Source of the DNA: Hemiscyllium ocellatum
Taxonomy: Eukaryota
Assembly: GCF_020745735.1 (NCBI RefSeq)
Contig: NC_083417.1
Coordinates: 17,112,001 to 17,176,000 of the forward strand
Length of the DNA stretch: 64,000 nt
Direction of reading: 5' to 3'
Each line of letters starts with the position of its first letter. Position 1 is the stretch's first letter. This document shows positions 8,367 to 24,264 of this stretch, piece after piece. Under the pieces are notes generated by a model. The model saw only the letters and a program-made list of their open reading frames with translations. It was not told where the DNA came from and ran no database searches. The position numbers were made by a program, and so were the translations under genes.

Positions 8367-10066
8367 TTTAAGGTATCAGTGCAGCAAGGATTAAGCAAGA
8401 GTGGCACTAATTTCAGCTCAACATCCAGACTTCATTTAATTCACTGCTCAGATGACTCCTTAAATTTGAGTTTTTGACAGCCACCATTTTATCCTTAGCC
8501 AGAAATCTAAATGGATTGCTTTGGTCATCCTTGTGATCATCTGAAGGAGATAGTGACTCATCCAAGACTTAATCCTTAAATGATTATTTTCAAATGGAAT
8601 TGAAAAGCAATTAGAACTGGTTGTCAGCACCAAGTGGAACCAATGTCATGTTTGCTGGTGACACTACCCACTAGTAAGGAGGCAAATGAGGTACAGAAAT
8701 GTTAGTTATGAATCTATAAATTATATGTGGGGAAGGCCATTCAGCTCCAGCATTCAATCTGATCATTGCTAATCTGATTATAATCTCAAATCTGCATTCT
8801 CCCCTATCCCTGATAACCAAGGACAGGAACAGTTAACAAGGATTGAATGCACCTCTGACTATAAAATATTCAAGGACTCTCTTCCTAAACGTCACTTGGA
8901 AGCAGAGTTTCAAAGACTCTCAATCCTCAAACAAAAACACCCCACTTCTCTTTTAACGGAGTGACCCCTAGTTTTAGATTCTCCTGCAAGAGGAAACACC
9001 CTCTTCACAGCTAAGACAACCAATCAGCAAAAGGTAGTTATTTTTCAGGAATCACAGAGAACCCAAGTTACTACAGTAACAAACAAAAACAAATTGCTTG
9101 AAAAACTCAGTATGTTTGGTGCATCTGTAAAAACTTTTATGTCCAGTGATCTTTCTTTCATATGACCCTTCATTGCTCTGGAGGGTCACAGGACTCAAGG
9201 TTAACTTTCTCTTTACAGATGCTACTATGCAGGCTGAGTTTCTCCAGCAATTTGTTTTTGTTTATTTCAGATTTCAGCACCTGCAATTGTTTGGTTTTAC
9301 GACAGTAATGTAATTTTTTGTGCATGTTATAAACTAGTTACAAATAATGACAACAGAGATGCCAACACTTCTTTCCATCAGATACCTGCTCAAACTGGCC
9401 ATTTGAATCTGTAGGTTGAAAAGCTGTTTGACAGCTTTATGTAAAAACATGCTGTGACCAAAGTCTATGCCAGGACTTGAAGTTTCTGGATGAGAGGCAG
9501 ATTCAGTACATACTGAATCAAGACCTCCAGGTGTCATTCTAAACAATGTGAAAGTAATCAAAAATACAACAACTCAACACAAACTACTTCGCTAGGAACA
9601 GTGTGGAATTGCAAAGACCTGTATTTAGGTAGGATGAGATTACATCCCCCACCAGCACTTAGACACATCACATACAGCAAATCAAAGAGATTCCAACTTG
9701 GAAACATTTACACATGAAATTCTAGTGATGACACTGGTGTGCAGATGTTTGCAGGTTTATGGAAAATGCTGGAAATCCTGAACAGGTGAGGCGAAGATAG
9801 GTTAACATTTTGAACGGGGAGGAGAGGGAGAAGGGGGGGGATAAAAGTGACATTTCCGAGTACAAAAAAAAAGAAAGCCTCTCCTTCCTCTCGACCCCCT
9901 CTCATACAGGTACTCCAGACTCTGGCAGCAACGTCCCCTTGGCACAACATGAACCACAAGAGGTTAGCCGAGGACTCCGATGCTGCCAGGCCTGCTGCTG
10001 GGGAAGGGGTGGGGGGAAGAGAGAGTCCCCAGCAGCTTCCCTCTGAGCGCGCTGCTCTTCTCTTAC

Positions 10067-10270
10067 CAGAGTCAGGGCCACCTCCAGCATGGGCGCGAGG
10101 GCCAGGGTGCCATGGAAGAGGGGGACGCAGTCCACGAAGAGGACGGGCTGGCCGTCCTTCCTCTTGTGCTTCTCGGCCACCAGGATGCCGTTGACGGCGC
10201 AGTGCGGGTACTTGGCGGCGTGCAGCAGCATCTTGCAGTAGGCCTGGGTGGTGAGTCTGAACAAGGTCAT
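10067..10270 (-). CDS. EMC8: EMC8 (ER membrane protein complex subunit 8, COX4NB/NOC4) coding exon 1, 68 codons
   Basis: ATG in strong context (gcggccATGA); [31 protein letters not shown]...[24 protein letters not shown]|gtaaga. Head-to-head position with COX4I1 favours EMC8 over EMC9. Confidence 0.96.
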
Positions 10271-10274
10271 GGCC

Positions 10275-10415
10275 GCGGGTGGGGGTGGGGGAGGGAGAGG
10301 GGGAGGGCTGGGGGAAGAGTAGGAGTTGGGGGTGGGGGAGGGGGGTGGGTGTGGGGGTGGGGGTGGGGGAGGGGGGTGGGGTGGGTGTGGGGGAGGGGGG
10401 TGGGGGTAGTGGTGC
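10275..10415 (+). repeat. G-run tract in the presumed EMC8 5' leader (C-rich on the mRNA strand); potential G-quadruplex
   Basis: Many consecutive G3-G7 runs with 1-3 nt loops immediately upstream of the ATG. Confidence 0.75.
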
Positions 10416-10419
10416 TGAC

Positions 10420-10745
10420 GACGACGACGCCGCCGCTTTCTCTCCTTCCCTCAGGCCCGGCCTCAGTAAGCCTCCTCGAGTTACTCGATCGCCCTGTTAA
10501 CGCACGGTCATCACCCGCCCGCCCGCTCCCTTTCTCTCTCCCTCGGGTTGGGGTATGGGGGAACACGGCCTCTCACATTCCCCCGATCTCGGATACCCGA
10601 ATCCCCGCCGCACGCTCTGGAGGCAGCACCAGCTCCACTCACCAGGCCCCGGCGCCCATTCACCGGCAACCGCCGTAAACCGTCAAAGAAAATGTCGCAA
10701 AGTCCTCAGTCGCGGGCGGTGACAGTTTGAGGGCGGGGCTTCTGT
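10420..10745 (-). promoter_or_regulatory. EMC8 CpG-rich 5' end / core promoter with a GC box (GGGCGGGG at 10731-10738)
   Basis: Local CpG enrichment in an otherwise CpG-poor window, directly upstream of exon 1; exact TSS not determinable. Confidence 0.7.
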
Positions 10746-10747
10746 TA

Positions 10748-11505
10748 TGGACCAATAGTAGCGAGGTGTCCATATTTTAATGCCCAATAGCAGTAAGGGA
10801 TCAATCCTATCTAGACCAATAGAATTGTAGGTCTATATTTATCGACCAATAGAATCGAGGGACCTGCCTTTCAGTACCAATAAGTACAAAGGAACTATTT
10901 TTTATTGACCAATCGGATTGTCGCGCTATATATAAATAAAATATTTATTTATATATTTATTTATATATAAATGATCCAATAGAGTTGGGGCCTATTTCTA
11001 ATCACCAATAGTAACAAAGGAACTATTTGCTATGGACCAATAGGATTGCGGGGTCTGTTTTAATACAACACTAAGAATACTTCAGACACTTTTATTGACC
11101 AATAGAATTGAGGCATCTACTTCTATGGACCAATTGGAACAAAGGAATTATTTTCTATGACCCCCCCAGACGATTAGCCGACTTTTTATGGACCGGAAAG
11201 ATTGAAGGGTTTGTTGTTATGCACCAATAGGATTGAAACATTTAATATTATCAACCAATAGAATTCAAGTATTTATTTCCATCGACCAATAGCATTAAAG
11301 GATCTATTTTAACGACCCAATTATATTGAAAGATAGTGGACCAATAATCTTGCCTGAAGCTCAATTCTCTTGCTCCTCAGAAAGCTGCCTGACCTGCTGT
11401 GCATTTCCAGCACCACCACCTGCAGTTCCAACTTTCTTCCAGTCTATTGAAAGGATGATTTGTTTCGACCAATAAGATTAGAGGACGATCTTGATAGCCC
11501 AATGG
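10748..11505 (+). promoter_or_regulatory. Degenerate ~31-bp tandem array of CCAAT boxes (NF-Y-type, mostly GACCAATAG)
   Basis: CCAAT at 10752, 10784, 10816, 10846, 10877, 10909, 10976, 11005, 11037, 11099, 11130, 11224, 11255, 11286, 11317, 11341, 11469, 11499, all in the same orientation. Confidence 0.85.
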
Positions 11506-11756
11506 AATATGAGAGGCGGAAGTGGGTACTACAGATGCTGGAGATTATAGTCTAGATTAGTGTGGTGCTGTAAAAGCACAGCAGGTCAGCCAGCATCCAC
11601 ATAGCAGGAAAATCAACGTTTTGGGCAAAAGCCCTTCATCATATGAGAGTCTAGTTGTGATGAGCCAATAACAGATGGGAACGTATGGAGTAACATGTGA
11701 AGTTAGTTTAAGTCTAGTTTAATGGATCAGTGAATAACCTTTTACTTTTATCGCAC

Positions 11757-12169
11757 TAGAATTCCTACAGTGTGGAAACAGACCCTTTGGGCCAACAAGT
11801 TCACACTGACCCTCTGAAGAGTAACCCACCTCGTCTCATTTTCCTACATTTATCCCTGACTAATGCGCCTAACACTTTAGCATAGCCAATTCACCTGACC
11901 TGCACATCTTTTGAAACGTGGGAGGAAACCACAGCACCAAGAGAGAACCCATGCAGAAATGGGGAGAATGTGCAAACGCTGAAAATGTGTTGCTGGAAAA
12001 GCGCAGCAGGTCAGGCAGCATCCAAGGAACAGGAAATTCGACGTTTCGGGCACAAGCCCTTCATCAGGAATGTGCAAACTCCAAGCAGACAGTCGCCTGA
12101 GGCAGGAATCAAACACAGGTCCTTGGCACCGTGAGGCAGCAGTGCTAACTGCTGAGCCACCGTGCCACC
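11757..12169 (-). mobile_element. HE1-type tRNA-derived V-SINE, interrupted by a family-A element at 11978-12071
   Basis: Reverse complement reads ggcacggtggctcagcagttagcactgctgcctca...tggagtttgcacattctcccc...tgtttccacactgtag; duplication gaatgtgcaaac at 11966-11977 and 12068-12079. Confidence 0.85.
12036..12071 (-). ncRNA. Minimal type I hammerhead ribozyme motif (family A)
   Basis: AUUC-CUGAUGA-A-GGGC(UUGU)GCCC-GAAAC-GUC-GAAU: stem I AUUC/GAAU, stem II GGGC/GCCC, palindromic ACGU helix III, GUC cleavage triplet. Confidence 0.8.
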
Positions 12170-12829
12170 TGTTACTTGCTGGATCAGCAATTTGATAGGC
12201 TTTTCCTGTTAGACTAATTAGGCAGAAAATACTATTTTGACATGAGGGAAGGGCCAATTTTCTACAGACCAATATGACAGAGTCAGTTTTGATGGACAAA
12301 TACACTTTAATACGATAGTTCAAAATCACACAACCTAGGTTAAAGTCCAGCAGGTTTATTTGGAAGCACTAGCTTTCGGCAAGTGGCTACTTCATCATTA
12401 AATACAATATTTTGATATTCTAATAAAAGAAGTGGACCAATTTTAATAAACCATGAACCAGAAATGCCTCAAAACAGCCCCTTTTTGATGGTCTCATGGG
12501 AAGTGTGGTTTGTCCCAAGGACACCAAAACATAAATCCACACAAATGTTTGTTTAGCGCATTACCAATGTAAGAAAACAGTTAATAACTTCTGAACATAA
12601 CAAAATTCTATATGAACAAGAGGAAAGGAGCCATTACAACTAGATTACAATGTCAAGTTAGTTGGGCGTCTTGCAATTTCTTCACAAAAAGCATAATACT
12701 ACAGATGTTGGAAATTAGAAACAAAAAAAACAGAAGATGCCAGAAATAGTCTGGATCTAGTTGGAAAGAAACAGCAAAGAGCCAAGATATCCATTAGTCT
12801 GTTGAAACAAGGGTACACAGAGGAAAAAA

Positions 12830-14245: not shown

Positions 14246-15451
14246 ATGTTCTAACTGTATTTTCTCATTTTTATTTGTCAAATGTATATTTGCACATGAG
14301 AAAGGAATGCCAAGCACTTGTAGTTTCTGCTATTGTTATTTTAAAGTTCTAGAATTGGTTGATCCCTTTATGGCCATTGATCACAGCAGAGTTTTAAAGG
14401 AAATTATGAATGAATTATATTTTCATAACACTTCTACTTACAAACCATTGGTAGTACAATGGCTTGTGATTCTGTACATGTTTATGAATTCAGGACTGAT
14501 GGACATGGGAATGTTATGATTTGGCATGGAAGATATGGGGGACTAAAGGAGGTACAGTAGATGGGCATGGCCTAACATGGAGGATAGGGGGATCTTTGGG
14601 GGTAGGTAGGAGAATATTTTTTGGCATGTATTGCGTGAGCAGCCATTGGGTGTGGATGGGCAGTATGAGTTAGTCCGGGGGCATAGGTTAAGAATTCTTG
14701 AAGTTATTTTTCAATGGTACCCTCTTCTAGACTCCCCTGAGGGGCTGTGGACCACAAGTTTTCAAAACATTGGTTTGACTCCAAGAAAAATGTGTGTGCT
14801 AGGATTTGGGTATTGTGCAATAGAACCAGCCAGTAGTGAGTGTTAGTAGTTGGTTCATTGCGAGCATGGTAGGACATTGGCATCTGACGGGAGACAACCA
14901 ATGGTGGAGTGATTTCAAATAAAGGTACAATACATCTCAGGGATACAACCCACAAATTTGTGTTAAATGGAGATAACTGAGGAATCTCTCAAAAAATTCA
15001 ATTTGACTACAAATGTGTTTGAGGTCAAAAATGAAAATTGATCATGTAAAAATGTGGTAAATGTCTTTATTTTTCAATTTCTTCAAATCTTGTCTTGGAT
15101 TAGCTTGGCAGGGCAATGAAAACTCTTGGGGGTCATATCTGGAAAACATCCAGAAATTTTCTTTATCTTCTTAGTGATTGCCTTCAAATAAGTGTGGGTC
15201 AGTACATCATCTTAACAAGTAAGTTAAACATGACCTTTGAGTATTTGTCATGAAATGTGAAAACCTGGAGACTTTATCACTTCACATTGGGAAAGAGGCA
15301 GGTGGGTAGGTTGATGTTCATTGGACTCTTCATGGTCACCAGCCTCCTCAGCTGAAACATGTACTGCAGTCATGATTGCTTTATCTATTAGTTCCTTTGA
15401 GCAGTATGATGTTTTCCATCAACTCTATGTTTCTGTAGTTGTTTCTTAAAG

Positions 15452-16655
15452 TTATAGAGACATGGAGATGTACAGCACGGAAACAGACCATTCAGTCCAA
15501 CTCGTCCATGCTGACCAGATATTCCAACCCAATCTAGTCCCATTTGCCAGTACCCGGCCCATATCCCTCCAAACCCTTCCTATTCATACACCCATCCAGA
15601 TGCCTTTTAACCGTTGCAATTGTACCAGCCTCCACCACTTTCTCTGGCAGCTCATTCCATACACATACCACCCTCTGCACGAAAATGTTTCCCCTTAGGT
15701 CTCCTTTATATCTTTCCCCTCTCATCCTAAACCTATGCCCTCTTGTTCTGGACTCCCCCACCCCAGGGAAAAAACTTTGTTTGTTTATCCTATCCATGCC
15801 CCTCATGATTTTATAAATCTATATAAAGTTCAACTCTCAGCCTTTGATGCTCCAGAAAAACAGCTCCAGCCTGTTCAGCCTCTCCATACAGCTCAAATCC
15901 TCCAACCCTGGCAACATCCTTGTAAACCTTTTCTGAACCCTTTCAAGTTTCACAACATCCTTCTGATAGGAAGGAGACCAGAATTGCACACAATATTCCA
16001 AAAGTGGCCTAACCAATGTCCTGTACAGCTGCGACATGATCTCCTACCTCCTGTCCTCAATACTCTGACCAATACAGGAAAGCATACCAAAGACCTCTTC
16101 ACTATCCTAACTATCTGCGACTCTGCTTTCAACGAGCTATGAACCTGCACTCCAAGGTCTCTTTGTTCCGCAACACTCCCTCAGACCTTACCATTAAGTG
16201 TATAAGTCCTGCTAAGACTTGCTTTCCCAAAGTGCAACGCCTTGCATTTATCTAAATTAAACTACACCTGCCACTTCTCAACCCATTGGCCCATGTGATC
16301 AAGATCGCATTGTAATCTGAGGTAGCCTTCTTTGCTGTCCACTACACCTCCAATTTTGGTGTCATCTGCAAACTTACTAACTGTACCTCTTATGCTCACA
16401 TCCAAATCATTTATATAAATGACAGAAAGTAATGGACCCAGCACCGATCCTTGTGGCACTCCACTGGTCACAGGCCTCCAGACTGGAAAACAACCCTCCA
16501 CCACCCTCTGTCTTCTACCTTTGAGCCAGTTCTGTATCCAAATAGCAAGTTCTTGCTGTATTCCATGAGATCTAACCTTTCTGATCAGTTTCTTACGGGG
16601 AACCTTGTCAAATGCCTTGCTGTACTCCATATAGATCACGTCCACTGCTCTGCCT
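15452..16655 (-). mobile_element. CR1-clade LINE 3' portion
   Basis: SKAFDKVP, GVPQGSVLGP, KFADDTK, LYRTLVRPLLEYCVQFWSP motifs and 3' tail on minus. Confidence 0.92.
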
Positions 16656-16659
16656 GGAA

Positions 16660-17195
16660 TTTCCATGCTATCCTTTTCCAGATGAGCAAAAACAACTTCA
16701 CCATTGAGTTGGTTGGTCTCATCCTGCACTACCGTGTTCTTGGTATTTGTGCATTTGTCGCCTCTTTGAACCCAGAAGCAGTAGGCAATTGTAGCTTCCA
16801 TCACTGTCTTCCATGCCTTCTTCATGAGCAGTTGGGTTGCACCTTTTTGATGGCCTTGGTCACCTGAAAGACCAGCTGCCTACAGCAGTAGAGCAAGCCT
16901 TTTTGTCTTCACTTCACTTTATCTCCAATCAATGGCTTTATTAATCTCCTCTCAGGTTGAGCCAGAATGTCTGAACATTCTGTCAGACTGATCTTGATGT
17001 CAAATGATGCTTGACTGGTTTTCTTTTCACTTTGGTGGGCAAAATTCCCATTAGGCTGCATGGCCACAAGGAGAGAACACACATGCTGATTGACATGCAG
17101 GTGATGGAAGACACTAACACACGTGGACCTGCATAGCACTCAAAAAAATTAGAGGGCACATAGCTAATATGGCATAACTCCATTCTGAATGGTAG
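16660..17195 (-). mobile_element. Possible degraded pogo/Tigger-like DDE transposase remnant
   Basis: Minus-strand peptides MQP..GI and KAWKTVMEATIAYCF resemble the QP.D.GII and AW..V...TI.NCF blocks of Tigger transposases; heavily frameshifted. Confidence 0.4.
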
Positions 17196-17212
17196 GTGCT
17201 GTCATCAGAAAA

Positions 17213-17448
17213 GAGATAAATACAATGACTGCAGATGCTGGAAACCAGATTCTGGATCAGTGGTGCTGGAAGAGCACAGCAGTTCAGGCAGCATCCAACG
17301 AGCAGCGAAATTGACGTTTCGGGCAAAAGCCCTTCATCAGGAATAAAACTTTATTTCTGATGAAGGGCTTTTGCCCGAAACGTCGATTTCGCTGCTCGTT
17401 GGATGCTGCCTGAACTGCTGTGCTCTTCCAGCACCTCTGATCCAGAAT
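17213..17448. mobile_element. Fold-back Penelope-like element (family A) with ~100-bp inverted arms and a hammerhead motif on plus at 17353-17388
   Basis: 14-bp direct repeat ctgtcatcagaaaa at 17199-17212 and 17449-17462; ctgatga-a-gggc(tttt)gccc-gaaac-gtc. Confidence 0.85.
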
Positions 17449-17896
17449 CTGTCATCAGAAAAACATGCTTGAATTTGGCTAATCTGAAGTTACCAGTTTG
17501 AATTATCAGTCCTGGCCATCATTCTATTGGATTTATTATAATTCTGGTAGGAATGACAACTTCTCCCCAACTACCATTCCAGCTTATCTGAATTTGATTG
17601 TCAATTTACAGTGAAATCACGAATGCTCAAGCATCAGTTTTGGAGGCTTACAGCACTGGAGAAAATGACAGAGAAGACAAGGTGGCAAGGCATGTTCTAA
17701 CAAGGAGGAGCATTTTAACATTAAGGTTTTGATGAATCAGGAGCAGTGTAAATAAATGAGCACACAGTGGTGGTGGATGGGCAGGTGATTCATTGGTGAA
17801 CAAGATTGGGTGCAAGTTACAACACAGGCATTTCAGGTGATCTTAAATTCAAAGAGGATTGCGTGTGAGAAGCTGCCTAGATATATATTGGAATAG

Positions 17897-18089
17897 GTGA
17901 AAGTGAGGACTGCAGATGCTGGAGAGTAGAGTCCAGAATGTGGTGCTGGAAAAGCACAGCAGGTCAGGCAGCATCCGAGGGATAGGAAAATTGATGTTTC
18001 GGGCAAAAGCTTTCCCTGAAACATCGATTTTCCTGCTCCTCGGATGCTGCGTGACTTGCTGTGCTTTTCCAGCACCACACGCTTGATAC
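17897..18089. mobile_element. Fold-back Penelope-like element (family A), ribozyme core deleted at the centre
   Basis: Direct repeat attggaatag at 17887-17896 and 18090-18099; inverted arms. Confidence 0.8.
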
Positions 18090-18849
18090 ATTGGAATAGA
18101 CTCATTTCTAAATCCCTTCTGTCACAGAGGCACTCAACCCCATCTGTATCTCTTGAATGTCGTGATCTTTCCATATAGAAATTCTCTTATCCTCTAAACC
18201 TATATTAACTCTCTCCCCTTTCCCTCAACCTCTTTGATATTATCTTGCCTCTCTTCTCTACCAATTCAGTTGCTTTGTTTTATATCAGCCATTTTGCTAA
18301 GTCATGCTGGCACTTTTTCACCAGCTCCATCACAGTTTTTCACTCTTTTTAGTCAAGTGTAGCATGTCCTTCCTCATAACCAGGGGCAGCCAAACATTTA
18401 ATCTTCCCCCAATTCCATTTTTAAAAATTCTCTGAATGTTTCTTTTCTTTCCAAACATCATCCCTATCTCTTCCATTCTTATTCAATCGCTCACACTGCA
18501 TTCCATTGTCTCCTCTTTTACTGCCACTTATTTACCCCACATTCGCCTCCTGTCTAATAAAGGTCATGATTGAGAACGTCTACAGTCTTAAAACTTGTCC
18601 TTGAACATTTAGACTAAAATGTAATGTTGAATTAAGGAACACATTTGCTGAACACTAGAAAATAGACAGGCAGGTAGGCTCAGAAAAAAGGGGGGATCCC
18701 AAGTTATGCAGAAGATAAAGACACTGGTCATACTCCTGCTCTCCATTTGTTAATACACTTGAACACCTGAACATTTGATAGCACTTACTGTTTACAAGAT
18801 TCAGCTCTCGCTCTGAGTGGACTCGTCATTCACTCACTGAAGTGCACTC

Positions 18850-19560
18850 TTGGAACTCCTTTTAGGGTTCATTGGATATGCAAAAACAAAGCCTACCCAT
18901 ATTTATCCAATGACTGGTATGGACAGTGTGCCCTCGTACACATCTTACCACTTTTCACCCTCCACCACAAATTACCTTAAGTAGGTGACGAATGGAACGC
19001 CCACCAACATGTAAATCAGTACGGAGCCAAAGGTTGAGGAAAAGCAAAACGGACTTACATAACATCTTCCATCAACACACCTAGTGGTCTAGATTGCTGG
19101 GAGACCTTATTCCTGCCTGAGGTGTTGAGATGGCCCTAGATCAGATAACTGACCTTGCGTAAGACATAGAAAAACTTGCCAACTTGACTGCCCATGCTCT
19201 CAAGCTGGTGAACAAAGAGTTACAGGAGACCCGGATGATGACGCTTCAGAATCGACTAGTGCTAGATTTCCTCCTTGCCAGAGAAGGAGGTGCTCATTCA
19301 GTCATTGTTTCATCTACATTAATGATTTCTCAAAAGACATTTTGGATGACACAGATGTTATCAACAAAGCGGGTCAAGATGCAGGGAAGATACCTGCCCT
19401 ATCATGTGGATGGAGTTTTACTTGCTGGCTATGGTCGCTGTGTGGATGGACATATGGGACGTATTGATAGTCTTTGGTCTCATCCAAGGAATATATATTA
19501 TCGTCCACTTATAAATGAAATGGACCATACATTGCTTTTTGCCAAAGCCATAGAGGAATC
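18850..19560 (+). pseudogene. env: Retroviral env remnant (class I, gamma/epsilon-like): SU C-terminus and TM ectodomain
   Basis: WICKNKAYPYLSNDWYGQCAL; basic cleavage-like KAKR; heptad region; immunosuppressive domain LQNRLVLDFLLAREGG (19244-19291); CFIYIND after a frameshift; several stops. Confidence 0.85.
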
Positions 19561-19830
19561 TGGTTAATCGACCCTTGTCTACCCCTGTACCTCCATGCCT
19601 GAACTTTCATGCTGAAATTCAGTATCTTTCAGACTCTGAGAGAAGATGACTCACCAGAGGAGGCACTTGACTTATTGAGAATACAAAATGACTGAACTGA
19701 CTAATTATATTTATATAAGCCAAGTGGTTGTCATGAAATGACAAAAGGAGGGAATGAGAAAGTCTATAGCCTTAAGGGAGGCAGGGAGGCTCAGAAAAAG
19801 GGGAACCCAAGTTATGCAGAAGATAAAAAC

Positions 19831-21360
19831 ATCTCTGTGGAAGCTAGAGAAGTGATTGCTGGGCCTCTTGCTGAGATATTTGTATCATCGATAGTCACAG
19901 GTGAGGTGCTGGAAGACTGGAGGTTGGCAAACGTGGTGCCACTGTTTAAGAAGGGCGGTAAAGACAAGCCAGGGATCTACAGACCGGTGAGCCTGACCTC
20001 AGTGGTGGGCAAGTTGTTGGAGGGAATCCTGAGGGACAGGATGTACACGTATATGGAAAGGCAAGGACTGATTAGGGATAGTCAACATGGCTTTGTGCAT
20101 AGGAAATCATGTCTGACAAACTCGATTGAGTTTTTTGAAGAAGTAACAAGGCAGATTGATGAGGGCAGAGCAGTAGATGTGATCTATATGGACTTCAGTA
20201 AGGCATTCGACAAGGTTGCCTATGGGAGTCTGATTAGCAAGGTTATATCTCATGGAATAAAGGGAGAACTAGCCATTTGGATACAGAACTGTCTCAAAGT
20301 TAGAAGACAGAGGGTGGTGGTGGAGGGTTGTTTTTCAGACTGGGTGCCTGTGACCAGTGGAGTACCACAATGATCAATGCTGGGTTCTCTTTTTTTGTCA
20401 TTTACATAAATGATTTGGATGCGAGCATAAGAGGTACAGTTAGTAAGTTTGCAGATGACACCAAAATTGGAGGTGTAGTGGACAGTGAAGAGAGTTACCT
20501 CAGATTACAACAGGATCTGGACCAGTTGGGCCAATGGGCTGAGAAATGGCAGATGAAGTTTAATTCAGATAAATGCGAGGTGCTGCATTTTGGGAAAGCA
20601 AATCTTAGCAGGACTTATACGCTTAATGGTAGGTCCTAGGGAGTGTTGCTGATCAAAGAGACCTGGGAGTGCAGGTTCATAGCTCCTTGAAAGTGGAGTC
20701 ACAGGTAGATAGGATAGTGAAGAAGGCGTTTGGTATGCTTTCCTTTATTGGTCAGAGTATTGAGTACAGGAGTTGGGAGGTCATGTTGCGGCTGTACAGG
20801 ACATTGGTTAGCCCACTGTTGGAATATTGCGTACAATTCTGGTCTCCTTCCTATCGGAAAGATGTTGTGAAACTTGAAAGGGTTCAGAAAAGATTTACAA
20901 GGATGTTGCCAAGGTTGGAGGATTTGTGCTATATGGAGAGGCTGAACAGGCTGGAGCTGTTTTCCCTGGAGCGTCGGAGGTTGAGGGGTGACCTTATAGA
21001 GGCTTACAAAATTATGAAGGACATGGATAAATAGACAAAATCTTTTCCTTGGAGTCGGGGAGTCCAGAACTAGAGGGCATAGGTTTAGGGTGAGAGGGGA
21101 AAGATATGAAAGAGACCTAAGGGGCAACTTTTTCACACAGAGGGTGGTACGTGTATGGAATGAGCTGCCAGAGGAAGTGGTGGAGGCTGGTACAATTGCA
21201 ACATTTAAAAGGCATTTGGATGGGTATATGAATAGGAAGAGTTTGGAGGGATATGGGCTGGATTCTGGCAGGTGGGACTAGATTGGGATGGGATATCTGG
21301 TCGGCATGGACAGGTTGGACCAAAGGGTCTGTGTCTATGCTGTACATCTCTATGACTCTA
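19831..21360 (+). mobile_element. 5'-truncated CR1-clade LINE inserted in the ERV 3' LTR
   Basis: Near-continuous RT motifs (YRPVSLTSVVGK, YMDFSKAFDKV, KFADDTK, LYRTLV.PLLEYCVQFWSP) and tctatgactcta tail. Confidence 0.93.
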
Positions 21361-24264
21361 TCTGTGCTCACCAAGTGATAACAGGATGCTCTAAGGCAAT
21401 TAAGAACATTTGCCTTAACATCAGTGAATCTGTGTAAACAGGACACCGAGTAATAACATTCATGGCTGTTCCCTTGTGAAATTTATGACGGAGTTTGATT
21501 CTGATCTCGAAACGAAACTTGGTACTATCAAAAGCTGTGTAATTAATGGTCAAGTCCTATAAATTATAACGGATTCTTATTACCCCTTGTAAGCTAGGCT
21601 GAAACAGAGGAAAACACATCTTTGCTTTTATAAGTCCTTGACTTGAGAGTTCAAAAGGAATGAGAGAGAGAGAGAGAGAGTGAGAGAGAGAGATCATTTT
21701 AGTAACTGGGGCTGCCAGCAAAAAAAAACTCTTTATGCTTATCTGCTATGGATTGAACTTAATTACATTTTTGAGATTTTATGATGATTTTGTGTTGCTA
21801 TTACTGGTTATGAAATGCAAACTCTGTAAAAAGTAATATTGATGAAGCTTTAACTTACTTGCTGAGCTTGCAGACCATCCTACAGGCTGCCCCACTATCA
21901 ATTCTAACTAGTCAGATCTTATGTCTTATTTGAATTTGAATCACAACCCCAAAAAGAAAGCATGTTTAATTCACGATTAATGAATCAGTTTAAATACAAC
22001 CTTAGAGTAACATCTCAGCCTCAGGCACAGATGATTCTGTGCTTAAGAGTAAAAGCAGGAGTCTGACCTAGCTCAAAAAATATTCTAAACCCAACATTGA
22101 AGAGATTCTGGCACAATGTGTCTGGAAGTCATTTTATGTTCAAAACTTTTGATCTCCTTGCTAAGAAGCCGTTTTGTAAAAGATTGTATCTGACATGTGA
22201 GATGTGCAAGGTTACCTTATGAACTCTCCAATTAGCTCAGACTGGTACCTCGTTATGATACTAACTTATCTCAACAGGCGCCTAACAGCTGGATTTGTTT
22301 ATCCCACCTGATGAATGGCTTAGGGCCTGTAGATGTGATTAGTCGAGCGTACACAGACCTGTCAATTAACTTCTCTTCCTTACGAATTGTTGTCTTTCAC
22401 TGTTGTCTGCCTAATTAAGAACATGCAATGCTTTTGTAAACTTTTTGTATAAAGGAAGACACTTTGTGTCAGTACATCGGAGTAGCCTGCTGGGCTCTTG
22501 AAGAGCTGGTGCCCTACTCTTCTGGGTTTTTAGAACCTACTTAGTTTAGCTTATAGGTATCAGTGTTATGTTGTAATAGTGATGCTATTGGTAAATAAAG
22601 GGGATGACTAAAATTAAACTAAACTGTCTGTAAGAGTTTTCTATTCCAGACTATCAATGAGAACTATCTCCAGGATGACCAAAGAGAGGCTTACAGGTTG
22701 AGTCCATAAGGGATTCCTTGGGTCATCTCAAATCTGTACTTCAACATAATCTTGTCCCAACTGCGCTTCCAGCACTAATGGCTCATACACGTTGTCGATG
22801 AGGGGTTGGTTTACTCACAATATTGTTCCCATCTCCATCTGTCAGCTTCTCACTAATCTAGTCATTAGATATGGGTTTTGTGATGGGGGCTGGGCTAGCA
22901 TTTGTTACCCATCCTTAATTACCCTGGAACTTGCTCAGGCAATTTCGGAGTCAGACAAATTACTTTGGGTCTGGAGTCACATGCATAGGAAGGATATCAG
23001 ATTTTCTTCCCTAAAAGGCATTAGTGAACCAATTGGTAATAATTTAATGGGCATCACAATTGAGACCAACTTTATATTGCAGGTTTTTTGAATAGCAGTG
23101 ACAGAATTTTATACTTGTGTCTGGAGAACATGAGCCTGGGACTCCTGGATTAGTTCAATGATATTGCTGCTACGCCACCAAACCCTCTCCCCCCATCCAA
23201 AAGAAGTAATTACTGTAAAATTAATCAAGGCGTGGGAACCAATCGATTTAATACTAATTCCATATCTGAGGCTTCAAAGTAAATCCTAACCTTTTTTATA
23301 AGTGGAAAGCTGTGAATGGAACACAGTTCTCTGGGAGAACATCTTTTTATCACAGCATAATGACAGACTCATTGTAGCTCAGTTCTCTTTAAACTTCTGC
23401 CAAGTATTTCCTGAAATGTGGCAAACAATCCTTGGAAACTAAATAAAAGAATCCAGTTTCCAGAATTGATATCCCTCACAAAAACAGATGCGCTAATGAA
23501 CTCAGCTAGTTAGTGTAACCCTGTAGACATCCCAGAGGTTTTAGTAATTAGATTGCTCTCATCAAATTAGATATATAATGAATCACAAATATCCCATCAA
23601 AGCAGCCCAATTAAGACACTGTTGTCCAGTGATATTTACACTCTGGCTTAAAACATTTGTCTCCACATCATATTTCAACTCTGGCCAAGTAATTGCTTCA
23701 CAGACATGACACATCTGGAGAGACTACCTCACTAATTTCAGTACTTGACATCTCTGGATTTAGAATATTTATTCGGATATGCTCCAATGAGGTGAAAGTG
23801 ATGCAACATAAAAGAAACATATGACCAAGTGTTGCTTCAAGAAGGCTGAGCAAAATTGAAGTCAATGGAAATGTGGGCAAAATTATCCAATTGTCAGGTC
23901 AGACATAGCACAAAGGAAGATCGTTGTGATTGTTGAAAGTCATTTATTCCAACCCCAAGTCATCGTTCCTCACAGAAGCGTACCATGCCCAAATATCTTC
24001 AGCTGCATTACCCATGACCCCCTCTCCAATGTAATGTTATTTGATAATTACACAATGTTATGTAACATTTGTGAATCTTCAGATACTGGAGCAATATACT
24101 GAACCGAGATGCAGCAAGACCTGGACAACATTCAGGCTTGGATCAACATGTGACAAATAATATTCACACCGCACAAGAGACAGGCAATGACTGTCTCTTA
24201 TACAGAAAATCTACCATGTATTGCATATTGCATTGAGCCTAGAGACAATCCTTTGGCAGCACTA

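What the first reader, a model, noticed from the sequence alone, without database searches (positions are those of the whole stretch)
10748..11505. Helically phased array of 18 CCAAT boxes abutting the EMC8 promoter
CCAAT recurs at intervals of 32, 32, 30, 31, 32, 67, 29, 32, 62, 31, 94, 31, 31, 31, 24 bp, mostly about three helical turns or near-multiples of it. The linkers are highly diverged while the RACCAATAG core is kept. Established: NF-Y binds this motif, and promoters with two or three CCAAT boxes about 32 bp apart are known. Inference: an array this long, with phase roughly kept across skipped units, looks like a minisatellite-built NF-Y platform under selection, perhaps keeping the promoter nucleosome-free or shielding it from the adjacent TE-dense spacer.
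Basis: partly seen in the sequence, partly recalled or inferred. Interest (0 to 1): 0.7.

Follow-up and report, generated by a model that had tools for sequence, protein, structure and literature searches.

The report
Ancient phased CCAAT-box array, EMC8 promoter
Just upstream of the housekeeping gene EMC8, this shark carries 18 same-direction CCAAT boxes about 31 bases apart; skates, a sawfish and a zebra shark have a 6 to 10-box version at the same spot, so it is an old, selectively kept multi-site promoter, most likely for the factor NF-Y, that sharks later expanded.

Summary
There are 18 plus-strand CCAAT pentamers at 10752-11503, where about 1 is expected. They form a decayed 31-bp tandem repeat beside the EMC8 CpG-island promoter (EMC8 ATG at 10270, minus strand).

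The intervals of 62, 67, 94 and 128 bp are not selected skips. They are units that lost their box, a TA microsatellite and a transposon-fragment insertion.

The array is orthologous across elasmobranchs:
- zebra shark: 10 boxes
- two skates: 6 boxes each
- sawfish: 7 + 3 boxes
- chimaera: none
- gar: one box

Adjacent boxes are 30.97 ± 1.12 bp apart (n = 29). Between skate and sawfish all 6 aligned boxes are identical (30/30 bases), while linkers are 63% identical (p about 1e-6). Between the two sharks the core is 91% identical and the linkers 76% (p = 0.004), but individual distal boxes have been lost in each lineage.

Template-switch-tagged skate cDNAs put the nearest box about 53 bp upstream of a transcript start. 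A 31-bp spacing is the published preferred distance of NF-Y twin sites.

Verdict: a conserved NF-Y-type multi-box promoter, with about 6 boxes constrained, that expanded in orectolobiform sharks. NF-Y binding itself is inferred. Earlier notes of this scan report similar arrays elsewhere in this genome (PLPBP and others).

The parts
10748..11529 (+). Whole 31-bp tandem array: 18 intact CCAAT boxes plus about 4 decayed units. CCAAT reads on the + strand, so it is ATTGG in the EMC8 sense.
   Evidence: Colinear with the zebra-shark array.
10752..10913 (+). Proximal regular block of six boxes (intervals 32, 32, 30, 31, 32). The first four are intact in both sharks. This is the most likely constrained core.
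10927..10969 (.). TA-rich microsatellite grown inside unit 6. It explains the 67-bp interval.
   Evidence: absent in the zebra shark.
11068..11098 (+). Phased unit that lost its CCAAT (now ACACT). It explains the 62-bp interval.
11161..11223 (+). Two phased units that lost CCAAT (now CCCCC and CCGGA). They explain the 94-bp interval. The zebra-shark orthologue of the second still has CCAAT.
11360..11438 (.). Fragment of a dispersed shark repeat inserted in the array (approximate limits). It explains the 128-bp interval.
   Evidence: its 19-mer has 14 copies in the window against 0.02 expected. Absent in the zebra shark.
11439..11468 (+). Decayed unit (CCAGT). The zebra-shark orthologue keeps CCAAT.
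10731..10738 (.). GC box (GGGCGGGG, Sp/KLF type) between the nearest CCAAT box and the predicted start site. Conserved in the zebra shark.
10670..10702 (-). Conserved twin motif (TTTGCGAC and TTTACGGCGG in the gene sense). It aligns with the skate cDNA 5' end, so this is the predicted EMC8 start-site zone.
   Evidence: The start site in this species is inferred by homology only.
10271..10747 (-). CpG-island 5' region of EMC8 (GC 0.68, CpG observed/expected 0.68), including a (GGGTGG)n repeat at 10277-10407.
10064..10270 (-). EMC8 exon 1 coding part (69 aa).
   Evidence: 100% identical to catshark EMC8 over 69 aa.

Best explanation
The array is the upstream promoter of EMC8. It is a head-to-tail stack of NF-Y-type CCAAT boxes, all in one orientation and spaced about 31 bp (about three helical turns), ending some 55-80 bp upstream of the transcription start.

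Origin (shown): tandem duplication of one 31-bp unit in the elasmobranch stem lineage. The array is present in sharks and batoids and absent in a chimaera and a gar.

Selection (shown): about 6 boxes have been kept box for box in batoids while their linkers drifted. In the orectolobiform shark lineage the array expanded to about 17-22 units before the epaulette/zebra shark split. Its distal part has since been eroding through lost boxes, a microsatellite and a transposon fragment.

Mechanism (inferred from published NF-Y biochemistry): each box binds one NF-Y trimer. That footprint, positions -7 to +17 and so about 24 bp, fits the 31-bp period, so all sites can be occupied together. Each trimer bends the DNA about 80 degrees towards the same side. 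The stack then holds the region upstream of the start site nucleosome-free, fixes where transcription begins, and makes promoter output robust through redundancy.
For: The array is real and non-random.

Orthologous arrays sit at the same place and in the same orientation relative to EMC8:
- zebra shark: 10 boxes
- Amblyraja and Leucoraja: 6 boxes each, spacing 31, 31, 33, 31, 31
- Pristis: 7 + 3 boxes
- Callorhinchus: no box within 1.9 kb
- gar: a single box

Adjacent-box interval: 30.97 +/- 1.12 bp, n = 29.

Core versus linker:
- skate versus sawfish: 30/30 against 97/153 identical, Fisher p = 6e-6; 6 of 6 boxes kept against 0.10 expected per box, p = 1e-6
- epaulette versus zebra shark: 67/74 against 303/400, p = 0.0035

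Sawfish linkers still resemble the shark unit profile (z = 4.3, 0 of 5000 shuffles), so the arrays share an origin.

Flanks fit the NF-Y preference: purines before the box, and C/A/G then A/G after it. Skate boxes are mostly CCAATCA.

Skate cDNA contigs begin with the SMART template-switch oligo. Their 5' ends lie 209 and 161 nt before the Leucoraja ATG, about 53 and 101 bp downstream of the nearest box.

Literature:
- PMC4982600: direct CCAAT dimers in human promoters peak at 31 bp with further maxima every 10-11 bp; the minimum is 24 bp; NF-Y bends DNA about 80 degrees.
- PMC1802594: a 4-box NF-Y array drives a mouse promoter.
- PMC6624317: NF-Y maintains the nucleosome-depleted region and start-site fidelity.

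CpG observed/expected is 0.57 in the array against 0.26 in the window.
Against: There is no binding, chromatin or expression data for any elasmobranch here, so NF-Y occupancy is inferred from sequence alone.

The start site in this species is not measured.

In the two sharks individual boxes are clearly dispensable. Of the aligned boxes, 4 are epaulette-only and 1 is zebra-only; 5 more epaulette boxes fall in alignment gaps. A transposon fragment sits inside the array. Most of the 18 boxes may therefore be near-neutral.

Shark boxes mostly read CCAATAG, which is acceptable but not the optimal NF-Y flank.

Alignments of repeats can favour matching the CCAAT cores, though the batoid linkers are unique enough to align unambiguously.
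Confidence: 0.72

Rival explanations
1. The array is a functionless, slowly decaying minisatellite that merely persists because elasmobranch DNA evolves slowly. On this view the CCAAT cores look conserved by chance or through alignment bias.
For: The distal part of the shark array is visibly eroding, with lost boxes, a TA microsatellite and a TE insertion. Within this species the linkers keep about 70% identity, so the core excess is modest.
Against: In batoids the linkers have diverged to 63% identity, yet all 6 aligned pentamers are identical and the spacing stays at 31-33 bp (p about 1e-6). The array has stayed at one promoter, in one orientation, in five species of two deeply split lineages.
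Confidence: 0.07
2. The boxes are selected, but for something other than NF-Y-driven EMC8 transcription. Candidates are another CCAAT/ATTGG reader (a Y-box protein, C/EBP, CUX), a boundary element, or an enhancer for the divergent neighbour COX4I1.
For: COX4I1 lies head-to-head on the + strand from about 14250 (COX4 annotated). No binding data exist. PMC1802594 also saw C/EBP in the complex on one CCAAT array.
Against: Strict retention of all five bases is the hallmark of NF-Y rather than of the looser C/EBP, CUX or NF1 sites (established knowledge). The 31-bp period equals the NF-Y twin-site optimum (PMC4982600). The array abuts the EMC8 start site, about 55-80 bp away, but is about 3 kb or more from COX4I1. 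In the three batoid loci no COX4 gene is called within the 8 kb upstream.
Confidence: 0.12
3. The array is the internal tandem repeat of a transposable element that happened to land beside EMC8.
For: The spacer to the right is full of dispersed repeats, and one fragment lies inside the array. Many TEs carry minisatellites, and human LTR12 carries NF-Y site arrays (PMC4889920, PMC4982600).
Against: No other copy of the unit exists in the 64-kb window. There is no other phased run in about 185 kb of orthologous loci. The array is at the orthologous position in five species. No terminal repeats or element boundaries were seen. If it ever was a TE, the insertion predates the shark-ray split and has been exapted.
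Confidence: 0.04

Closest known systems
Twin or multiple NF-Y CCAAT-box promoters of mammals (direct CCAAT dimers about 31 bp apart, for example TOP2B; cell-cycle promoters)
   Same: Same orientation of boxes. The same roughly 31-bp, three-helical-turn spacing, above the 24-bp steric minimum. A promoter-proximal position and an accompanying GC box (PMC4982600, PMC4889920).
   Different: The papers read here describe two boxes, or four in the mouse array. This array has 6-7 strictly phased boxes conserved box for box in batoids, and 10-18 in sharks. It was visibly built by tandem duplication of one unit.
Mouse Mrps12-Sarsm bidirectional promoter with an array of 4 CCAAT boxes bound by NF-Y (PMC1802594)
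   Same: A housekeeping gene next to a mitochondrial-function gene, head-to-head. All boxes lie on one strand. The array is needed for output and directionality, and NF-Y binding was proven there.
   Different: The mouse array fills an intergenic region of under 200 bp and serves both genes. Here the array abuts only EMC8, COX4I1 is about 3 kb or more away, there are more boxes, and the period is regular.
CCAAT promoter minisatellites noted earlier by this scan in the same genome (PLPBP 26-bp/28-box array s1-147332; SNAPC5 s1-147312; TAF15 s1-178359; s1-147480)
   Same: The same genome, and the same idea of a tandem repeat of transcription-factor boxes at a promoter. The PLPBP note reports the same pattern: 6-7 boxes in a skate and a sevengill shark, amplified in the epaulette shark.
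   Different: A different gene, a different unit (31 bp against 26, 20 or 42 bp) and no sequence relation. Those notes are AI notes that I did not re-test.
LTR12/ERV9 NF-Y site arrays in human
   Same: Several same-strand CCAAT boxes bound by NF-Y in a repeated unit.
   Different: Those boxes are spaced 24 bp apart, lie inside a dispersed retroelement and are mostly distal (PMC4982600). Here there is a single locus, a 31-bp spacing and a promoter position.

Membership tests
NF-Y multi-CCAAT promoter module | Intact CCAAT pentamer at every site | tested here: met
   18 sites in the window and 6-10 in each orthologue. 30/30 core bases are identical between skate and sawfish.
NF-Y multi-CCAAT promoter module | Flanks fitting the NF-Y preference (purines 5' of the box; C/G, less often A, then A/G 3' of it) | tested here: met
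   In the window, position -2 is G in 12/18 boxes and position -1 is A in 14/18. Skate boxes are mostly CCAATCA. Shark boxes are mostly CCAATAG, which is acceptable but not optimal. The consensus comes from my own knowledge; no PWM was run.
NF-Y multi-CCAAT promoter module | Spacing of at least 24 bp, with a preference near 31 bp (whole helical turns) | tested here: met
   30.97 +/- 1.12 bp, n = 29, compared with PMC4982600. The one 42-bp interval in Pristis is 31 bp plus one helical turn.
NF-Y multi-CCAAT promoter module | Position just upstream of the transcription start (classically about -60 to -100) | tested here: inconclusive
   Met in Leucoraja: template-switch-tagged cDNA 5' ends place the nearest box about 53 and 101 bp upstream. 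In the window the start is only predicted by alignment, at about 10672-10695.
NF-Y multi-CCAAT promoter module | Physical binding of NF-YA/B/C | not testable with these tools
   Needs ChIP, CUT&RUN or EMSA.
Minisatellite / promoter VNTR | Head-to-tail units of 10-100 bp derived from one ancestor | tested here: met
   A 31-bp consensus recovered by wrap-around alignment of 22 units. TRF sees the best-kept 2-2.5 copies.
Minisatellite / promoter VNTR | Copy number varies between individuals | not tested
Between species the number does vary: 6, 7+3, 10 and 18.
TE-internal tandem repeat | The same repeat occurs at many unrelated loci within a definable element | tested here: not met
   No second copy in the window or in about 185 kb of related loci. 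A whole-genome test was not possible.

The most novel reading that the evidence does not exclude
Elasmobranchs may have a lineage-specific promoter architecture. In it, a single CCAAT unit was tandemly multiplied into long, helically phased NF-Y stacks of about 6 sites (roughly 190 bp, about one nucleosome's worth of DNA). These would be bent the same way at every site and would act as a sequence-encoded, histone-fold 'pseudo-nucleosome' that permanently replaces the -1 nucleosome. Such stacks would have been kept for roughly 300 million years at several housekeeping genes (EMC8 here, PLPBP and others in earlier notes) and would be free to expand in some sharks.
Probability: 0.25. Interest if true: 0.75.

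Novelty: new variant of a known kind. Interest (0 to 1): 0.58.

Why it matters
Promoters with two to four or five NF-Y boxes, and the 31-bp twin-site rule, are known from mammals. This is a natural 6- to 18-site version whose boxes can be followed one by one across the shark-ray split.

It is a rare case in which homotypic site number, spacing and turnover can be read directly from evolution. About six boxes and the period are held fixed, extra boxes drift, and linkers are free.

It offers a ready-made natural deletion and expansion series for asking how many phased NF-Y trimers a promoter needs, and whether they form a higher-order bent structure. Together with the scan's other notes, it suggests that box-carrying promoter minisatellites are a recurrent feature of this genome.

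Tried and rejected
- **Reads.** I therefore have no read-level start site, no expression data and no copy-number polymorphism. Later queries used 10300 and upward, or EMC8 residues 75-201.
- **Word shares in putative RNA runs**. They show only that some of the 5' region is held by two runs of the same organism. They cannot place the start site.
- **Other shark and ray genomes.** Rhincodon had no record. Only one shark order is therefore sampled.
- **Unit-by-unit reciprocal best hits** between the two sharks were too noisy for 26-nt linkers. I rely on the colinear global alignment and the blastn blocks instead.
- **Skate linkers against the shark unit profile** were not convincing on their own (z = 2.2, matched by a rotated control). 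The link to sharks rests on the sawfish.
- **Rfam** found nothing in 10300-12600.
- **Literature.** No paper was found on the EMC8/COX4NB promoter or on shark CCAAT repeats.
- **A MEF2/TATA-like AT tract** in the shark linker was considered as a second site and dropped, because batoids do not keep it.

Full report
**1. The observation**

The window holds 18 CCAAT pentamers, all on the + strand, between 10752 and 11503. The intervals are 32, 32, 30, 31, 32, 67, 29, 32, 62, 31, 94, 31, 31, 31, 24, 128 and 30 bp. The background density is 1.27 per kb per strand, so about one box is expected there. The next densest 760-bp stretch has 5-6. Runs of three or more boxes spaced 28-34 bp occur nowhere else in the 64 kb, and in only 1 of 200 shuffles.

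EMC8 exon 1 lies on the minus strand with its ATG at 10270. Its 69 residues are 100% identical to catshark EMC8. A CpG island (GC 0.68, CpG observed/expected 0.68) fills 10271-10747. The array begins about 480 bp upstream of the ATG and reads ATTGG in the gene's sense.

**2. Anatomy**

A wrap-around alignment gives a 31-bp consensus unit and 22 units. The five core positions match the consensus in 86-95% of units. The other 26 positions match in 36-91%, with a mean near 0.7. In this species the linkers are therefore moderately conserved, not 'highly diverged'.

The long intervals have plain causes:
- 62 bp: one phased unit whose box mutated (11068).
- 94 bp: two such units (11161, 11193).
- 67 bp: a TA microsatellite (10927-10969).
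- 128 bp: a fragment of a dispersed repeat (about 11360-11438) plus a decayed unit (11439). The repeat's 19-mer occurs 14 times in the window against 0.02 expected.

A GC box (10731-10738) sits between the nearest CCAAT box and the gene.

**3. Related sequences**

The EMC8 protein search and the cluster listing gave orthologues from many cartilaginous fishes. Genomic DNA could be fetched for six species:

| Species | Locus | ATTGG boxes upstream of EMC8 |
|---|---|---|
| Zebra shark (Stegostoma) | L001 | 10, at -824 to -405 from the ATG |
| Skate Amblyraja | L002 | 6, spaced 31, 31, 33, 31, 31 |
| Skate Leucoraja | L003 | 6, spaced 31, 31, 33, 31, 31 |
| Sawfish Pristis | L006 | 7, spaced 31, 31, 42, 31, 32, 29, plus 3 more beyond a 390-bp interruption |
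| Chimaera Callorhinchus | L007 | none within 1.9 kb |
| Gar Lepisosteus | L008 | a single box at -310 |

In every elasmobranch the boxes have the same orientation relative to EMC8 and sit directly upstream of its 5' region. Over the four independent species, adjacent-box intervals average 30.97 +/- 1.12 bp (n = 29). No other phased run exists in about 185 kb of these loci.

**4. Is the core selected?**

Skate and sawfish arrays align box for box. All 6 aligned pentamers are identical (30/30 bases), while the aligned linkers are 97/153 identical (Fisher p = 6e-6). With a neutral chance of 0.10 per pentamer, 6 of 6 has p = 1.2e-6.

The epaulette and zebra shark arrays are colinear from the GC box to the far end (blastn blocks). 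Most of the expanded array therefore predates their split. In that comparison:
- the core is 67/74 identical against 303/400 for the linkers (p = 0.0035)
- 9 boxes are shared
- among aligned boxes, 4 are intact only in the epaulette shark and 1 only in the zebra shark
- 5 epaulette boxes fall in alignment gaps, through lineage-specific duplications or deletions

The first four boxes next to the gene are intact in both sharks. Sawfish linkers still score against the shark unit profile (z = 4.3, 0 of 5000 shuffles), which ties the batoid and shark arrays to one origin. The skate-only test was not convincing (z = 2.2).

The data also show that single distal boxes in the long shark array are expendable.

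**5. Position relative to transcription**

Two skate transcript contigs (L004, L005) begin with the SMART template-switch oligo. I recognised this adaptor from my own knowledge. Their cDNA 5' ends map 161 and 209 nt before the Leucoraja ATG. That places the nearest box about 53 bp, or about 101 bp, upstream of a transcript start.

The sequence around that start is a twin motif conserved in all five elasmobranchs. It aligns to window 10670-10702. By homology this predicts a start about 55-80 bp from the first box at 10752. I could not measure the start in this species.

**6. Mechanism**

Shown here: a tandem origin, deep conservation of the pentamers and of the period, a promoter-proximal position in skates, and erosion of the distal shark units.

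Inferred: - All five bases are strictly retained.
- The flanks are purine-rich on the 5' side and C/A/G then A/G on the 3' side.
- Published work shows that direct CCAAT pairs in human promoters peak at 31 bp, with further maxima every 10-11 bp. NF-Y contacts span -7 to +17, which gives a 24-bp minimum. Each trimer bends DNA by about 80 degrees, so sites three turns apart bend the same way (PMC4982600; also PMC4889920).
- A four-box array is bound by NF-Y and sets the output and directionality of a mouse promoter (PMC1802594). NF-Y keeps the region upstream of start sites nucleosome-free and fixes start-site choice (PMC6624317).

On this reading the array is a redundant, fully occupiable NF-Y stack that holds the EMC8 promoter open. 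CpG observed/expected of 0.57 in the array (0.85 in its proximal part), against 0.26 for the window, fits partial protection from germline methylation. The counts are small, at 6-15 CpGs.

**7. Surroundings**

COX4I1 lies head-to-head on the + strand from about 14250 to beyond 23255. This follows from colinearity with the zebra-shark COX4 gene. The array therefore sits at the EMC8 end of an intergenic region of about 3 kb or more. It is not a compact shared promoter.

**8. Comparison and novelty**

The element works like the known multi-CCAAT NF-Y promoters and shares their spacing rule. It differs in three ways:
- site number: 6-7 conserved, 10-18 in sharks
- its evident origin as a minisatellite
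- traceable box-by-box conservation across the shark-ray split, roughly 270-300 million years by my recollection (not tested here)

Earlier notes of this scan name this genome as the epaulette shark. They describe other CCAAT-bearing promoter minisatellites in it. One is a PLPBP array with the same pattern of 6-7 boxes in outgroups and amplification in this shark. I did not re-test those notes. The EMC8 exons in the window are compatible with that species but do not single it out.

I rate the finding a new variant of a known kind and of moderate interest. The class-wide 'NF-Y pseudo-nucleosome' reading is possible but unproven.

Noticed in passing
window 10277-10407: A (GGGTGG)n hexamer repeat, about 22 copies, lies immediately upstream of the EMC8 start codon. 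It reads C-rich (CCCACC)n in the mRNA sense, inside the presumed 5' UTR. The zebra shark has a C-rich but non-repetitive stretch at the same place.
   Followed up: partly
window 10670-10702; L001, L002, L003, L006 just downstream of their arrays: A twin motif (TTTGCGAC ... TTT(A/G)CG(G/A)C in the gene sense) is conserved in all five elasmobranchs at the mapped or predicted EMC8 start site. I could not assign a factor to it.
   Followed up: partly
window about 14250-23255 (+ strand): COX4I1 lies head-to-head with EMC8, colinear with the zebra-shark COX4 gene. The old COX4 / 'COX4 neighbour' pairing is kept in shark, chimaera and gar, but with several kb between the genes in the sharks.
   Followed up: partly
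L004:1-24 and L005:1-25: Public skate transcript contigs still carry the SMART template-switch oligo at their 5' ends. This is adaptor contamination, but it is useful because it marks the cDNA 5' end.
   Followed up: yes
window 11560-11600, 11985-12030 and 12 other sites: A dispersed shark repeat with a characteristic GCTGCCTGACCTGCTG core occurs 14 times in 64 kb. Pairs in opposite orientation lie about 100 bp apart at 17274/17405, 17954/18046 and 33744/33847.
   Followed up: no
L006 (Pristis) -344 to -386 from the ATG: The one irregular interval in the sawfish array is 42 bp, against 33 bp in skates. The insertion adds about one helical turn and so keeps the rotational phase.
   Followed up: no
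window 10877, 11005, 11130: Three units share an ACAAAGGAA signature and recur every four units (125-128 bp apart), against one such unit in the zebra shark. This suggests an epaulette-lineage duplication of a block of about 125 bp, or deletions in the zebra shark.
   Followed up: partly
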